DNA of 64,000 nt, from positions 112,778,001 through 112,842,000 of the forward strand of contig NC_083227.1 in the NCBI RefSeq assembly GCF_032191835.1, written 5' to 3'. The DNA comes from Heteronotia binoei. Its lineage: Eukaryota. The notes below the pieces were generated by a model. The model made no database searches and had not been told where the DNA came from. It worked only from the letters and a program-made list of their open reading frames with translations. The first letter of the stretch is position 1. Every line of letters starts with the position of its first letter. Of the stretch, positions 16,337-33,600 are shown one piece after another. The position numbers were made by a program, and so were the translations under genes.

Positions 16337-16505
16337 CTACTGATCAGTGGAGATTTCTCTGTCTGGCTCCAATTTATTTGATTCTCCTGGAGAAGGAGTA
16401 TGGGGTGCAGAGTGAGATACAGAGGGAATGCCATGAGTTACAATCCCCTCTACTGGAGGCTCTGGCAGCCCTGGGGCTGCTACTCCCACTACTCCTGGAG
16501 GAAAT
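16337..16505 (-). CDS. CtBP-like gene, coding exon 9 (last): [55 protein letters not shown]
   Basis: Acceptor TTTGTAACAG|A, phase 2; aligns with the CtBP1/2 C-terminal tail; TAG at 16339-16337. Confidence 0.9.
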
Positions 16506-17014
16506 CTGTTACAAAAGAAAAAACATGATCATTACGTCACTGAGTACCCCCTAACTATTTCACCGCCAAAAACTATCCATAAAAAGTACAGCCATCAGAA
16601 ATTAAGAGCAGTGAAGACCAGTACAAAATGAGCTTAGAACAGCTATGAAATTCAATATTTACCTGGCTACCTGTGTTATGTAACGCTATATCTCAGCTAA
16701 TCAAGTTTGGTCCTCATTGCTTTAAGGATGAGCTCCCCATGTTAAAATAGCAAAAAGGGGATCTAGCTAGTAGCCTATCTGAAGTAGAAGGGTCCTCAAA
16801 GACAGTGGCCTTCTCAAGTTGGTACTCTTTGTTCAAGAAACATCATCTACAAAAGCAATCATGTTTTATTTCTTGTAATGAGTCTGCTGCCAAACAAAAA
16901 ATACACAAGGATGGATCAATTCTCACAAAGCTAGGCTGTACCCAGAAAGCCAGGGGACTGATGACAGCTAGAAACACATAACCAGTGCAAAAAGCAGTAG
17001 ATGAAACATCTCAC

Positions 17015-17135
17015 CTGTAAGCTGCAGCTCCATTAAGCTCTGGATGTACAGTTGCAGGATCAATACTGGACCACTGAGCCGCTAAAAGCAAGTACTCCTT
17101 ATTTACACAGTTCCTCAGACCATCAGGTATATGAC
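17015..17135 (-). CDS. CtBP-like gene, coding exon 8: [40 protein letters not shown]
   Basis: 121 nt with AG/GT ends; homologous to CtBP1 RIPDSLKNCVNKD...[10 protein letters not shown]. Confidence 0.92.
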
Positions 17136-17519
17136 CTATGGTGAAATCAAGAAAAGGAAAACACTAACTTGCACACAAAAAGCCAAAGCTAACATGCACA
17201 CAAAAGGATTAAGCAAATGTCCCTTCTTACTTTTAACATAGGACCTAAGAGATGAAAGAAGAGTCCACCCAACAACACTCATGTGCATACAATATCTCTG
17301 GAAGGTACCATACCAAGAAGAATGGCTCATTTGCTCTCCGGTGTTGTGGTTTTGAGAAAAAATTCCTTAGGCTGCAGACTCTAGGTGCCAGATATTAGAA
17401 CATAGGCACATAACAGAAGCCATGTTGGATCAGGCCAACACACAGTTGGACAATATATAGTCACACAGTGGCCAATATATATATACACACACACAGTGGC
17501 TAATAGCCATATATATATA

Positions 17520-30244: not shown

Positions 30245-31306
30245 CTACATAAGAACAGAAATCTTAATTAACTGTAATAATGAGCAATTATTTATTATAC
30301 TTACATCCTGTCTTTCATTTTGTACACATCTTACATAGGAGGTCTTATGTCCAGTCACTGAGCACACCAAGATCATCCTAGCTTCTGGAAGGCCATAGTA
30401 TCATGTGCTCTCTAACCTTATCCTGGTACTCACTATATCATCAGTTTTAATCCAGCAGCACAAAAAATGGACGAGATCTTAAAGCAGCTCTTCCAATTAA
30501 GGTATGTTTTCAAGACACACAAAAGCTCCCAACTCATATTAATACATGCACACAAACACTGCTTGAACAAGTGATGCATACAGCTGGGCTCAGCCAGACT
30601 TGTGAACTATATAACTGGCTGTCAAACCCCATCACAAAACCTGTGCACACTATAAACAGAATCAACCCTATGTAGTCTCATGAAAGGCAAACACAATGCG
30701 ACTCATGTTAATATCTCCTTTCTCTGACTCTTAAAGTGACCAGAAATAAAGGAAAATCAGGATTCATTTCCAGAGAGAAAAATGCTTATAATACATCCAG
30801 CATGTGTACAAATTACCCATTTCTGATTCAGACAGGTAGCAATGAAATACAAAATAAGGGTTCATAATGAACAATCCTGGAGGCGTCCCCCCCTTCTTTT
30901 TTAGTTCAGGAAAGGGAACAGCACAGACACAAATTCAGAGCAGGCATCAGAGAAGGGTCACATTGTACCATACACCAGAAATTCCTAAACCTTAGTGTGA
31001 TGAACCTCTCTATATCAAAACACAAAACTGCTCAAATGAAACTAATGCTGTAAGCCTAGGTATACATGTGGTACTAAGTCCCACTGAATACAACTGGACT
31101 TATTTCCAAAGAAACAAGTGCAGGATCAGGTTACAAAATATTGTGAGGACAACTTGCATGATAGTTATCAATCTGTTCACATTCAAGGAACAAGTAGAGA
31201 AAAGACATTATGTTTTTGAGGTGTTTTAAACTAGGATTCCAGGGAAGCAAAAAGGCTCTGAAAAATTTCTCCCCCTCCAGTTAATGCAGCGTGTGTGTGT
31301 CTAGAC

Positions 31307-31446
31307 CAGGGGTGGCCAATGGTAGCTCTCCAGATGTTTTTTTTTTGCCTACAATTCCCATCAGCCCCAGCCAGCATGGCCAATGGCTGGGGCTGATGGG
31401 AGTTGTAGGCAAAAAACATCTGGAGAGCTACCATTGGCCATCCCTG
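31307..31446. mobile_element. 140-bp palindromic hAT MITE
   Basis: Whole element is a near-perfect inverted repeat; TSD GTCTAGAC / GTCTAAAC. Confidence 0.88.
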
Positions 31447-32849
31447 GTCTAAACAATATTGTTCATGCTGCAGTCATCCCAGAGTCATGATGACTAGAAA
31501 GGAATATATAGATAAGCAGTCTCTCTTTTTCATCAACTGCAATGTGAGTGGGAGAATAAGACATTAGCAACTATTTCAGCAACTTCCTATATCTCCTTAG
31601 GATGGTAAGTAGTTCTGGGGTAACCAACACAGTGGCATCTTAGGCCACAGGGCACCATATCCTTGGCTCTTTCTTAGAAACATCCACTGCACACATTTGA
31701 GCATCTTAATGAATTAACTATTGTCAGGCAGTTAAAGAAAGCACATAAGACAACAACTGTGAGATGGTAAAGAAAATACAATGTCAAACAGCAGCTGTGT
31801 TATCAATACACACTTCTCACAATTTCCTGCACCTTCAGGTACCCACACATTTCCCGTTATATATATTTTAAAAACCCTCATTTCCATCACAGCATTAATG
31901 CACATAGAGCAGCTCTGTAGATAGTCACTGGGCACAGGCATATAGCAGTGCCACATAATTAGGTTACCAAACCCAGCCAAACCGTGTGTGCATGAGTTAC
32001 TTTTTCAAGAAGCCTGACTTACAATTTCCTACACAGTACTAGAAGATTCCTAAAGCATCAGTAAAATGTTCCTGATTGATTTCAAAACTATGTGACTAAA
32101 CCTCTGCTACCTGCTAAGGCCCTTACCCTCTCCAAGAAAAATATTTTTGTACACATCCTGACTATGCCAAAATGCAAATTCCTCACCTGCTCCCAGCCCC
32201 TTTCCAGGCAGTGAAATATAGGCAGCTGCCCGCCCACCCCCCACCACAATACAAAATAGATACTACCAGGACAGACTCTTTCTCAGAGTTCAACATGAGT
32301 GAGGGACTCTAGCAGACTTATTTTATCTGAAATCTTTGAATCTAACTTGGCTTTTAAACCCAGGATAAAGCTGCTGTCTTTATTACTGGAGATACCTTTC
32401 TCCAGGATACTATTAATGGTAACATCTGAGACACCCTTAAGTAAAATAAACTACACAGCATAGTACCCAACTATTGGGGCTGGTAATGGGTGCACCAACT
32501 AAGAAAAGGAGGTGCAAAACTACCAGATCAAATCGGATCTCAGTGATCGCACTGTAGACGTTATCCTCTCCCCCCAATTTGTACGGGGGGGGGTACTGGT
32601 TCACTTTGCAGTAGTACTTATAAAGCTTATCAAGATGTAGCAATCCAAATAGTGCACAAAGAAGAAGCTTAGAACTTTTACTAGTCAGGTGAGATTAGGA
32701 CGACTCCAGCAGGTCACTCATTGATATTCCTCGTGAGCCTCCTGCATTTGAACAAATCGGATAACAGCTCCAACATCGAAGTTTACAACGGGAGAAATAG
32801 CACCGATATCTAGCAAACGGCTTGATACCTTTAAAATAACAGTAATCAT

Positions 32850-33600
32850 AATAAAGGTTTCTGTCACCGCAGCAAGTGGAGAGCAACTCGGGAGCGGAGG
32901 GTCCGAATGAGAGCCTACGACAGCTTGCAATGAGACACACAAGTAGCCAGCAGCTTGGAGCAGAGCCCGGCTTCGCCGCTCCCCCAGTCCAGCCCTTCCC
33001 TCCCTCGTTCTCAGGGCGTTACCTTCGCAGATGCGGTCCAGCCTCTGACGCTTCACTTTGTGTCTGTCCATAGGACACGCCGAGACGGGCCCACGCGAGT
33101 CTGACGGGAGAGATGAAGGGAGGGCGCAACAAAAAGGCACAGCCCTGGCTCAGCTAGCGGGACCGAGTGCAGAGGGGAGCTGCGGGTTCCTGCCCAAGGC
33201 ACAGCAGCTGCAAGGAGGACCCGCAGCGACTCGTTCTCTGCCTCTACCCTCCCGGGAGGCAGCGGCAACCAGACCACTTCAGTAAGTGCAGCACATAACC
33301 CGTCCACCTCGCCTCCGCTCTTCCCCAGCTCAGCGCCCCCCGCCTCTGCCTCGCCACCGGCCTCTAAAAGGAAGCGGAAGGGCCGGACTGCGTTCGCGGA
33401 GGGCAGGCTCTCCCTCAATACCCGGGCAAAGCGGAACGCGTCAGCCAGAGGAATGCCTAGAAAGTCCCAGGGTCCAGGCAATCACTTCCGGAGTAGCACC
33501 TTAACCTTTTTATAGTGGCGCTTGTTTTCGCGATACAGGAGGGGTGGAGTCCTGTGTATAAGGGGCACGAAGATGGGAAGCGGGGGTGGGGCGAAGCATT
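32850..33600 (-). promoter_or_regulatory. CpG island / promoter of the CtBP-like gene
   Basis: CpG-rich; ETS/GABP-type CCGGAAGT on the minus strand at 33484-33491; CTTCCGCTTCC near 33370-33380. Confidence 0.7.
33023..33071 (-). CDS. CtBP-like gene, coding exon 1 (MDRHKVKRQRLDRICE-G), CtBP2-type NLS exon
   Basis: ATG at 33071; donor GAAG|GTAAC. The nine exons sum to 1320 nt = 439 aa + stop with consistent phases. Confidence 0.92.

What the first reader, a model, noticed from the sequence alone, without database searches (positions are those of the whole stretch)
16337..33071. Intact third vertebrate CtBP paralogue with mosaic CtBP1/CtBP2 features
Seen: nine exons (49/155/145/207/215/131/128/121/169 nt) give an intact 439-aa D2-hydroxyacid-dehydrogenase-fold corepressor with GLGRVG and the catalytic R/E/H. 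The N-terminal exon is CtBP2-like (KVKRQR NLS). The tail has a CtBP1-like GAAAYR and HTPSPG (the HIPK2-site context). It ends TDQ* without the CtBP1 PDZ-binding DQL, and the CtBP1 SUMO consensus VKPE reads NKLE. Established: human has only CTBP1 (4p16) and CTBP2 (10q26), with no CtBP between FAM53C and KDM3B. Inference: a 2R ohnologue lost in mammals. It is probably the gene labelled CTBP-like in some non-mammalian annotations, and I know of little functional study of it.
Basis: partly seen in the sequence, partly recalled or inferred. Interest (0 to 1): 0.75.

Follow-up and report, generated by a model that had tools for sequence, protein, structure and literature searches.

The report
Known third CtBP gene in gecko
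This is the gecko's intact, spliced and strongly conserved copy of 'CtBP1-like', a third vertebrate CtBP corepressor gene that mammals lost; the reading is right, but the gene is already annotated and was described in 2023.

Summary
Nine minus-strand exons (49/155/145/207/215/131/128/121/169 nt, all AG..GT) give a 439-aa CtBP. It is 100% identical to RefSeq XP_060096092.1 of Heteronotia binoei, where it is misnamed 'C-terminal-binding protein 2'.

- **Assembly gap:** 18880-19012 lies in intron 7, inside a transposon-laden insertion, so it does not touch the coding sequence.
- **Expression:** RNA contigs from two runs join exons 2-5 exactly at the predicted introns.
- **Constraint:** dN/dS against another gecko, a skink and a duck is 0.02-0.03.
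- **Phylogeny:** an ML tree gives three well-supported clades: CtBP1, CtBP2 and a third clade. The third holds tetrapods without mammals plus ray-finned fishes, and it holds this gene. AU tests reject a tetrapod-specific duplicate of CtBP1 (p=4.5e-6) or CtBP2 (p=1.8e-35).
- **Synteny:** FAM53C-CtBP-KDM3B is conserved in squamates, the KDM3B side in a duck, and the FAM53 side in a mormyrid fish.

The 'mosaic' is retained ancestral characters.

Two additions. The Xenopus entry Q9W758 (from memory, the XCtBP of Brannon 1999) is an orthologue. Tetrapod members have replaced the otherwise invariant PXDLS-cleft arginine (human CtBP1 R342).

The parts
33023..33071 (-). Exon 1 (49 nt): start codon and the MDRHKVKRQRLDRICE N-terminal segment
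   Evidence: The same segment is present in third-clade, CtBP2, lamprey and hagfish proteins.
30090..30244 (-). Exon 2 (155 nt)
   Evidence: RNA contigs X1 and X2 cover it and join it to exon 3.
29465..29609 (-). Exon 3 (145 nt), part of the 2-Hacid_dh catalytic domain
26733..26939 (-). Exon 4 (207 nt), ends within GLG of the NAD-binding GLGRVG
24796..25010 (-). Exon 5 (215 nt), NAD-binding domain
20934..21064 (-). Exon 6 (131 nt), holds catalytic R269 and E298
20411..20538 (-). Exon 7 (128 nt), holds catalytic H318 and W321
17136..20410 (-). Intron 7. It is enlarged by transposon insertions: RVT_1 fragments at 20152-19618, a LINE tail to about 18800, and DDE_3 at 18255-17896. It contains the assembly gap 18880-19012.
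   Evidence: The orthologous intron is about 520-590 bp in three other sauropsids.
17015..17135 (-). Exon 8 (121 nt). Its first full codon is H345, at the place of CtBP1 R342. It also holds the KEYL start of the C-terminal domain. The donor is followed at once by an in-frame stop if the intron is retained.
16337..16505 (-). Exon 9 (169 nt): C-terminal domain with VEGIV, HTPSPG, NKLE, and the ISTDQ-stop ending
32800..33600 (-). CpG island around exon 1 (GC 0.54-0.67, CpG o/e 0.70-0.81): the gene's likely own promoter. It is separated from the FAM53C 3' end by AT-rich, CpG-free sequence.
   Evidence: Promoter function is inferred.
14860..16336 (-). Probable 3' UTR of about 1.45 kb, ending after an AATAAA at 14887-14882 (minus strand)
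   Evidence: The length fits the 2920-nt RNA contig.
35322..37482 (-). Upstream neighbour FAM53C (last two coding exons in view), same strand
   Evidence: Pfam FAM53 E=3.6e-58. 77% identical to a snake protein named FAM53C. Annotated neighbour.
9304..9600 (-). Downstream neighbour KDM3B: exon 1 with a CpG-rich promoter, same strand
   Evidence: The annotated 1743-aa neighbour carries PWWP_KDM3B, Tudor_KDM3B and JmjC.

Best explanation
The locus is the Heteronotia binoei orthologue of the third gnathostome CtBP gene, called 'CtBP1-like' by Raicu et al. 2023, 'CTBP-like' in chicken, and wrongly 'CtBP2' by NCBI. It is a functional, expressed gene. It encodes an NAD(H)-binding corepressor with a D-2-hydroxyacid-dehydrogenase fold. 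By inference from CtBP1/2 and from the Xenopus orthologue, the protein docks on PXDLS-motif transcription factors, oligomerises and recruits chromatin modifiers. It keeps the ancestral N-terminal basic KVKRQR segment, as CtBP2 does, so it probably enters the nucleus on its own. It lacks the CtBP1-specific C-terminal leucine and the VKPE SUMO consensus. The gene arose with CtBP1 and CtBP2 before the bony-vertebrate ancestor, most likely in the early vertebrate genome duplications, since each CtBP lies on a paralogous FAM53-bearing segment. It was later lost in mammals.
For: Shown here:
- The gene model is identical to RefSeq XP_060096092.1.
- Spliced RNA contigs from two runs join exons 5-4-3-2 at the predicted GT..AG introns.
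- dN/dS is 0.018, 0.030 and 0.021 against Gekko kuhli, Tiliqua and Mergus.
- Pfam 2-Hacid_dh and 2-Hacid_dh_C match, and the best PDB matches are CtBP1 then CtBP2.
- GLGRVG, D207, R269/E298/H318, W321 and the PXDLS-cleft residues A55/V69 are conserved.
- The third clade has support 99/92 and holds the window, nested among squamates.
- AU tests reject union with tetrapod CtBP1 (p=4.5e-6) or tetrapod CtBP2 (p=1.8e-35).
- FAM53C-CtBP-KDM3B synteny is seen in H. binoei, G. kuhli and Tiliqua, the KDM3B side in Mergus, and a FAM53 gene upstream in Paramormyrops.
- The N-terminal exon is shared with cyclostome CtBPs.

From the literature: CtBP1-like is present from Chondrichthyes to Sauria and 'lost solely in mammals', with a CTD running KEYL...PADQ and a VEGIV motif (PMC9907507).
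Against: - The order of the three clades is unresolved in my trees.
- Shark/ray 'CtBP1-like' joins the third clade only weakly in one tree (79/89.9) and not in the other.
- Two teleost loci and the ray and Xenopus loci showed no FAM53 or KDM3B within 10 kb.
- RNA evidence covers introns 2-4 only.
- Absence from mammals was not tested directly here.
- The biochemical function is inferred from relatives. The protein also lacks the otherwise invariant cleft arginine (H345 in place of CtBP1 R342).
Confidence: 0.93

Rival explanations
1. A lineage-specific (squamate, sauropsid or tetrapod) duplicate of CtBP1 or CtBP2 that only looks intermediate.
For: NCBI names it CtBP2. Overall identity to CtBP1 (about 80-82%) and to CtBP2 (about 78-79%) is similar.
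Against: Orthologues occur in birds, turtles, amphibians and ray-finned fishes, in one clade with support 99/92. The AU tests reject both unions. The chromosomal neighbourhood is distinct and conserved.
Confidence: 0.02
2. An untranscribed or decaying relic whose open frame is kept by chance, or a gene broken inside the assembly gap.
For: There is an unread gap inside the gene's span. Raw-read depth on the exons was low in the two transcriptome runs sampled.
Against: The gap is intronic, inside a transposon insertion. All nine exons have orthologous counterparts; exons 1-8 keep their lengths in all three sauropsids, and exon 9 is 3 nt longer in the duck. dN/dS is 0.02-0.03. Spliced RNA contigs of 2920 nt and 1099 nt were found.
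Confidence: 0.02
3. A true third paralogue that arose by a small-scale duplication in an early jawed vertebrate rather than by the 2R whole-genome duplications.
For: Raicu et al. leave both options open. My trees do not resolve the order of the clades. Cyclostome CtBPs form their own group.
Against: The gene sits beside FAM53C, with an SLBP-like gene further upstream. From my own knowledge, CTBP1 shares 4p16.3 with FAM53A and SLBP, and CTBP2 shares 10q26 with FAM53B. This is the pattern expected of paralogous segments. I did not verify the human map here.
Confidence: 0.12

Closest known systems
'CtBP1-like' paralogue of Raicu et al. 2023 (Mol Biol Evol 40:msad003, PMC9907507)
   Same: It is the same gene family member. 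The CTD starts with KEYL and has the central VEGIV motif. The gene is present in Sauria, amphibians and fishes, and absent from mammals. Orthologues cluster with it in my trees.
   Different: The C-terminus here reads ISTDQ rather than the 'typical' PADQ; birds have IP[AT]DQ. Sauropsids also lack about six residues after VEGIV. The paper gives no synteny, which is added here.
Xenopus laevis 'CtBP2' (UniProt Q9W758, NP_001081966). From my memory of the record, this is the XCtBP of Brannon et al. 1999, the XTcf-3 corepressor.
   Same: It lies inside the amphibian branch of the same tetrapod clade (100/93 and 100/99). It shares MREGN, QGCFLVN, QW, YRFPPG and the PTDQ ending.
   Different: It is about 84-89% identical. 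It has Pro rather than His at the CtBP1-R342 position. The link between the accession and the 1999 paper could not be checked, because that paper is not held.
CtBP1 (solved structures such as 1MX3, 6CDF)
   Same: Same fold, NAD-binding site, catalytic triad and PXDLS cleft. It is the best PDB match for exon 5 (E=2e-39). It shares VEGIV and HxPSPG in the tail.
   Different: CtBP1 has the derived MGSSHLLNKG first exon, HW instead of QW, a VKPE SUMO consensus and the terminal DQL. All of these are absent here. It forms a separate clade (98/98).
CtBP2
   Same: It shares the MD[KR]HKVKRQRLDRICE first exon and has no terminal leucine.
   Different: CtBP2 has KEFF, MEGM/I, SPNQ and an NEQ ending. From the literature it also has a RIBEYE alternative first exon; I did not specifically look for one here. 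It forms a separate clade (100/97). The AU test rejects union.

Membership tests
CtBP corepressors (D-2-hydroxyacid dehydrogenase fold) | 2-Hacid_dh catalytic and NAD-binding domains | tested here: met
   Pfam PF00389 and PF02826 match on exons 3-6. PDB CtBP1/2 are the top hits.
CtBP corepressors (D-2-hydroxyacid dehydrogenase fold) | GXGXXG NAD(H) motif, Asp204, catalytic Arg266/Glu295/His315 and Trp318 (CtBP1 numbering, recalled from the literature and checked by sequence context) | tested here: met
   G184/G186/G189, D207, R269, E298, H318 and W321 are present.
CtBP corepressors (D-2-hydroxyacid dehydrogenase fold) | PXDLS-binding cleft residues Ala52 and Val66 | tested here: met
   A55 and V69 are conserved in all 23 third-clade rows.
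CtBP corepressors (D-2-hydroxyacid dehydrogenase fold) | Cleft-wall Arg342, said to be invariant from C. elegans to human (PMC13467200) | tested here: not met
   It is H345 here. It is H in 23 sauropsid rows, V in Podarcis and P in 36 amphibian rows. It is R in all 169 other CtBPs examined.
CtBP corepressors (D-2-hydroxyacid dehydrogenase fold) | Binding of PXDLS partners, NAD(H)-dependent oligomerisation and repression | not testable with these tools
   Biochemistry is needed.
CtBP1-like paralogue (Raicu et al. 2023) | Groups with other CtBP1-like genes, apart from CtBP1 and CtBP2 | tested here: met
   The third clade has support 99/92 and the AU tests reject the alternatives. The shark/ray members are only weakly attached.
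CtBP1-like paralogue (Raicu et al. 2023) | CTD begins with KEYL and has the VEGIV motif | tested here: met
CtBP1-like paralogue (Raicu et al. 2023) | CTD typically ends with PADQ | tested here: inconclusive
   It ends ISTDQ in squamates and IP[AT]DQ in birds, amphibians and many fishes. This is a close variant: the same DQ ending without a terminal L.
CtBP1-like paralogue (Raicu et al. 2023) | Absent from mammals | not tested
   No mammalian protein appeared among the orthologue-level hits. Only 120 of 1604 hits were listed, and no mammalian genome interval was examined.
CtBP2 (the name in RefSeq) | KEFF, MEGM/I, SPNQ and an NEQ-ending tail; RIBEYE alternative first exon; CtBP2 clade | tested here: not met
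   Tail motifs differ. The gene is outside the CtBP2 clade, and union is rejected at p=1.8e-35. The RIBEYE exon was not specifically looked for.
CtBP1 | Terminal DQL, VKPE SUMO consensus, HW motif, CtBP1 clade | tested here: not met

The most novel reading that the evidence does not exclude
The tetrapod branch of this paralogue has changed its partner-binding cleft. The arginine that is otherwise invariant in all CtBPs, and whose mutation in human CTBP1 (R342W) causes HADDTS, is His/Val in sauropsids and Pro in amphibians. Yet the gene remains under very strong purifying selection. If so, the gene would not be a redundant CtBP1 copy but a corepressor with an altered cofactor repertoire. Moreover, the classical Xenopus 'XCtBP/CtBP2' results would concern this gene, which mammals lack, and not true CtBP2.
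Probability: 0.3. Interest if true: 0.45.

Novelty: already known. Interest (0 to 1): 0.2.

Why it matters
As a gene discovery it does not matter much. The paralogue is published and is annotated in hundreds of genomes.

Its practical value is in tidying up names. RefSeq calls it 'CtBP2' or 'CtBP2-like' in reptiles, birds and amphibians, and 'CtBP1-like' in sharks. This invites wrong orthology calls. One example is treating Xenopus 'CtBP2' data as data on mammalian CTBP2.

The synteny shown here (FAM53C-CtBP-KDM3B, with a FAM53 neighbour also in a teleost) gives positional support for a genome-duplication origin, which the 2023 paper left open.

The natural replacement of the HADDTS-hotspot arginine offers a cheap comparative handle on what that residue does.

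Tried and rejected
- **Route to protein ids:** the spliced protein has no single reference and may not be typed in. I therefore used the big representative search once, on exon 5, solely to obtain ids of full-length relatives. The operators had flagged that search as costly. Most of its representatives were genomic ORF fragments or mis-spliced models.
- **Mis-picked outgroups:** P0111 and P0124 were first taken as invertebrate outgroups. They turned out to be poor mammalian CtBP1/2 models, and I dropped them from the second tree.
- **Synteny look-ups with no result:** there were no neighbours within 10 kb of the 100-kb stingray gene. Coilia has unrelated neighbours. X. laevis L has none. The exact product Q9W758 is not on record as a gene.
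- **Goby fusion protein:** the FAM53 part of the FAM53-CtBP fusion P0224 is too diverged to assign.
- **Unavailable paper:** Brannon et al. 1999 is not held, so the link from accession to paper rests on my memory.
- **Rejected reading:** I considered a recombinant or gene-converted 'mosaic' of CtBP1 and CtBP2. The CtBP2-like N-terminal exon is ancestral, and the tail features are shared across the whole third clade.
- I did not fill the N gap or look it up.
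Full report
**Observation.**
The gene lies on the minus strand. Motif searches in six frames located [43 protein letters not shown] and a TDQ-stop ending between 33059 and 16337.

Four stop-free combinations came out; only one keeps GLGRVG and the conserved [12 protein letters not shown] block, and it gives a 439-aa protein. Its exons are 33071-33023, 30244-30090, 29609-29465, 26939-26733, 25010-24796, 21064-20934, 20538-20411, 17135-17015 and 16505-16337. 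All have polypyrimidine-AG acceptors and GT donors.

The only N run in the window is 18880-19012. It falls in intron 7. On its upstream side are reverse-transcriptase fragments (Pfam RVT_1 at 20152-19618), and further downstream is a Tc1/mariner-type DDE_3 fragment (18255-17896). Intron 7 is 3275 bp here. In Gekko kuhli, Tiliqua scincoides and Mergus octosetaceus it is about 520-590 bp, and the flanking exons have the same lengths. The gap therefore sits in a lineage-specific transposon insertion and says nothing about the frame. I left it unread.

**Identity of the window and of the gene model.**
The spliced protein cannot be passed to tools by reference. I therefore searched the representative library with exon 5 and used the returned ids to run two word searches.

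P0270 is NCBI XP_060096092.1, 'C-terminal-binding protein 2 [Heteronotia binoei]', 439 aa. It is 100% identical to my model. Its locus is GCA_032191835.1 CM063329.1:112784337-112821071. That gene span is 16,735 bp, the same as in the window, and the exons are 100% identical.

**Is it a working gene?**
- *Domains:* exons 3-6 match Pfam 2-Hacid_dh and 2-Hacid_dh_C. Exon 5 matches solved CtBP1 structures best (E=2e-39), then CtBP2 (E=9e-36).
- *Functional residues:* all of the residues I checked are kept, namely the GXGXXG glycines, D207, R269/E298/H318, W321, the dimer arginines, and the PXDLS-cleft A55 and V69.
- *Selection:* Nei-Gojobori dN/dS is 0.018 against Gekko kuhli (32 synonymous against 2 non-synonymous differences), 0.030 against Tiliqua and 0.021 against Mergus.
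- *RNA:* two Logan RNA assemblies from one study contain contigs of 2920 nt and 1099 nt. These cover exons 5, 4, 3 and 2 with 0-3 mismatches per exon. They skip 1722, 2525 and 480 bases exactly at my introns, with CT..AC ends on the plus strand, that is GT..AG on the minus strand.
- *Raw reads:* two 2026 transcriptome runs gave only sparse exon coverage and one junction read at 6% sampling.
- *Transcript ends:* a CpG island (32800-33600) surrounds exon 1, and an AATAAA lies 1.45 kb past the stop codon. This matches the length of the 2920-nt contig.

**What it is.**
Sequence identities to the window protein are as follows.

| Compared with | Identity |
|---|---|
| Lizard, snake, bird and turtle proteins named 'CtBP2(-like)' or 'CTBP-like' | 95-99.5% |
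| Salamander and frog proteins | 84-90% |
| Stingray 'CtBP1-like' | 86% |
| CtBP1 | 80-82% |
| CtBP2 | 78-79% |

An ML tree (IQ-TREE, LG+C20+F+G4; 56 rows, then 63 rows) recovers these clades:
- CtBP1, with support 98/98 in the first tree and 99/98 in the second.
- CtBP2, with support 100/97 and 100/100.
- A third clade, with support 99/92 in both trees. It unites tetrapods without mammals (100/99) with ray-finned fishes.

The window nests among squamates. AU tests reject holding the tetrapod third-clade rows together with tetrapod CtBP1 (delta lnL 111, p=4.5e-6) or with tetrapod CtBP2 (delta lnL 155, p=1.8e-35).

Within squamates all three genes are seen. CtBP1 occurs in Erythrolamprus and the gecko Paroedura. 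CtBP2 occurs in Varanus and Gekko japonicus. The third gene occurs in Heteronotia, Gekko kuhli, Tiliqua, vipers, colubrids and Podarcis. I did not look for CTBP1 and CTBP2 in H. binoei itself.

The shark and ray 'CtBP1-like' genes attach to the third clade with 79/89.9 support in the first tree and are unresolved in the second. The order of the three clades is also unresolved.

**Synteny.**
- The upstream neighbour on the same strand is FAM53C. It matches Pfam FAM53 at E=3.6e-58 and is 77% identical to a snake protein named FAM53C.
- The downstream neighbour is KDM3B. Its exon 1 is at 9600, and the annotated 1743-aa product carries PWWP_KDM3B, Tudor_KDM3B and JmjC.
- The same order and orientation hold in Gekko kuhli and Tiliqua. 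The KDM3B side holds in a duck.
- In the mormyrid Paramormyrops the gene just upstream of its CtBP1-like gene contains a FAM53-type exon (37% identity over 246 aa, E=3e-22).
- Exons for an SLBP-type RNA-binding domain lie further upstream in the window, at about 57 kb.
- From my own knowledge, not checked here, human CTBP1 shares 4p16.3 with FAM53A and SLBP, and CTBP2 shares 10q26 with FAM53B. If so, the three CtBP genes sit on paralogous segments, as a 2R origin predicts.

**The 'mosaic'.**
- *N-terminal exon:* the MD[KR]HKVKRQRLDRICE exon is found in every full-length third-clade protein, in CtBP2, in lamprey and hagfish CtBPs, and even in one Hyla CtBP1 isoform. An invertebrate CtBP has a related form. 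It is therefore ancestral, and the usual CtBP1 start (MGSSHLLNKG) is the derived state.
- *Shared tail motifs:* in the tail, HxPSPG and PELNGA are shared by all three paralogues, and VEGIV by CtBP1 and the third clade.
- *Clade-specific tail motifs:* KEYL, QW, YRF and a final DQ without leucine mark the whole third clade. VKPE and the terminal DQL are CtBP1-specific.
- No recombination between paralogues is needed to explain this pattern.

**Comparison with what is known.**
Raicu et al. 2023 (PMC9907507) already describe three gnathostome paralogues, CtBP1, CtBP1-like and CtBP2. They report the third as present from Chondrichthyes through Sauria and amphibians and 'lost solely in mammals'. They characterise it by KEYL...PADQ and VEGIV, and they note that NCBI names are often wrong. 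Their text contains no synteny analysis and leaves open whether the origin was a whole-genome or an independent duplication. The finding is therefore correct but already known.

**Two things seen on the way.**
First, the 90% cluster of the Ascaphus orthologue contains X. laevis NP_001081966 / UniProt Q9W758, 'CTBP2_XENLA'. This sequence has all the tetrapod third-clade signatures. It sits inside the amphibian branch of the third clade with support of 93-100.
- To my recollection this entry is the XCtBP of Brannon et al. 1999, the XTcf-3 corepressor, whose citation is confirmed in PMC5668466. The paper itself is not held, so the link from accession to paper is unverified.
- If the link holds, the paralogue has had functional study under another name.
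- This curated entry may also be why NCBI names the whole clade 'CtBP2'. That is my inference.

Second, consider the arginine of TGRIPD, human CtBP1 R342. It is the recurrent HADDTS mutation site. A 2026 review describes it as invariant from C. elegans to human and as lying in the alpha-5 helix that walls the PXDLS cleft (PMC13467200). The table shows what I found at this position.

| Group | Rows | Residue |
|---|---|---|
| This gene (H345) and other sauropsid orthologues | 23 | His |
| Podarcis orthologue | 1 | Val |
| Amphibian orthologues | 36 | Pro |
| CtBP1-type | 55 | Arg |
| CtBP2/cyclostome-type | 73 | Arg |
| Fish and shark third-type | 37 | Arg |
| Unclassified | 4 | Arg |

Only four other sites that are at least 95% invariant elsewhere are changed in the tetrapod branch: P26, T154N, V233I and A259C. 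Whether this alters partner choice is untested.

**Verdict.**
Its category is already described and annotated, so I score interest low. The residual interest lies in the nomenclature problem, in the positional support for a 2R origin, and in the natural loss of the cleft arginine.

Noticed in passing
window 17131-17133 (codon for H345, first full codon of exon 8): This is the position of human CtBP1 R342, the HADDTS hotspot that is said to be invariant. It is His in sauropsid orthologues, Val in Podarcis and Pro in amphibian orthologues. It is Arg in all 169 other CtBPs examined, including fish and shark members of the same paralogue group.
   Followed up: partly
proteins P0356, P0352, P0337 (X. 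laevis): The curated Xenopus 'CtBP2' entry Q9W758 / NP_001081966 belongs to this third clade, not to CtBP2. The L and S copies lie on records of 161.4 Mb and 132.0 Mb. This may be the source of the RefSeq name 'CtBP2' for the whole clade.
   Followed up: partly
proteins P0382, P0385, P0391 (Mauremys mutica) and P0224 (Gobiidae): Some annotations call CtBP products 'protein FAM53C isoform X...' or fuse a FAM53 domain to the CtBP. This suggests read-through or merged gene models across the short FAM53C-CtBP spacer, which is about 2.2 kb in the window.
   Followed up: no
window 17012-17014, just past the exon 8 donor: Retention of intron 8 would place a stop codon directly after ...GAAAYR. That would give a 384-aa short-tail isoform. 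Raicu et al. mention short CtBP1-like variants in Sauria, and a turtle isoform (P0277) diverges at this same point.
   Followed up: no
window 56675-57058, minus strand: These are exons for an SLBP-type RNA-binding domain (YGKNT..., [14 protein letters not shown]). An SLBP paralogue therefore lies upstream of FAM53C, mirroring the SLBP-FAM53A linkage that I recall for human 4p16.
   Followed up: partly
window 25822-26569 and 28627-29000 (introns 4 and 3): RNA depth is very high here, with many loose ends, in all four runs (word depth up to about 22,000). This looks like interspersed repeats transcribed from elsewhere in the genome, not expression of this intron.
   Followed up: no
window 1658-2938, plus strand: A 427-aa open stretch carries a reverse-transcriptase domain (RVT_1, E=2.3e-12). 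It is a young LINE copy inside KDM3B intron 1.
   Followed up: no
proteins P0001, P0151, P0088 (Acipenser sinensis, 'UNVERIFIED_CONTAM'): These sturgeon models have up to three CtBP-like stretches in one protein. They are probably mis-joined paralogues or tandem copies in a polyploid genome.
   Followed up: no
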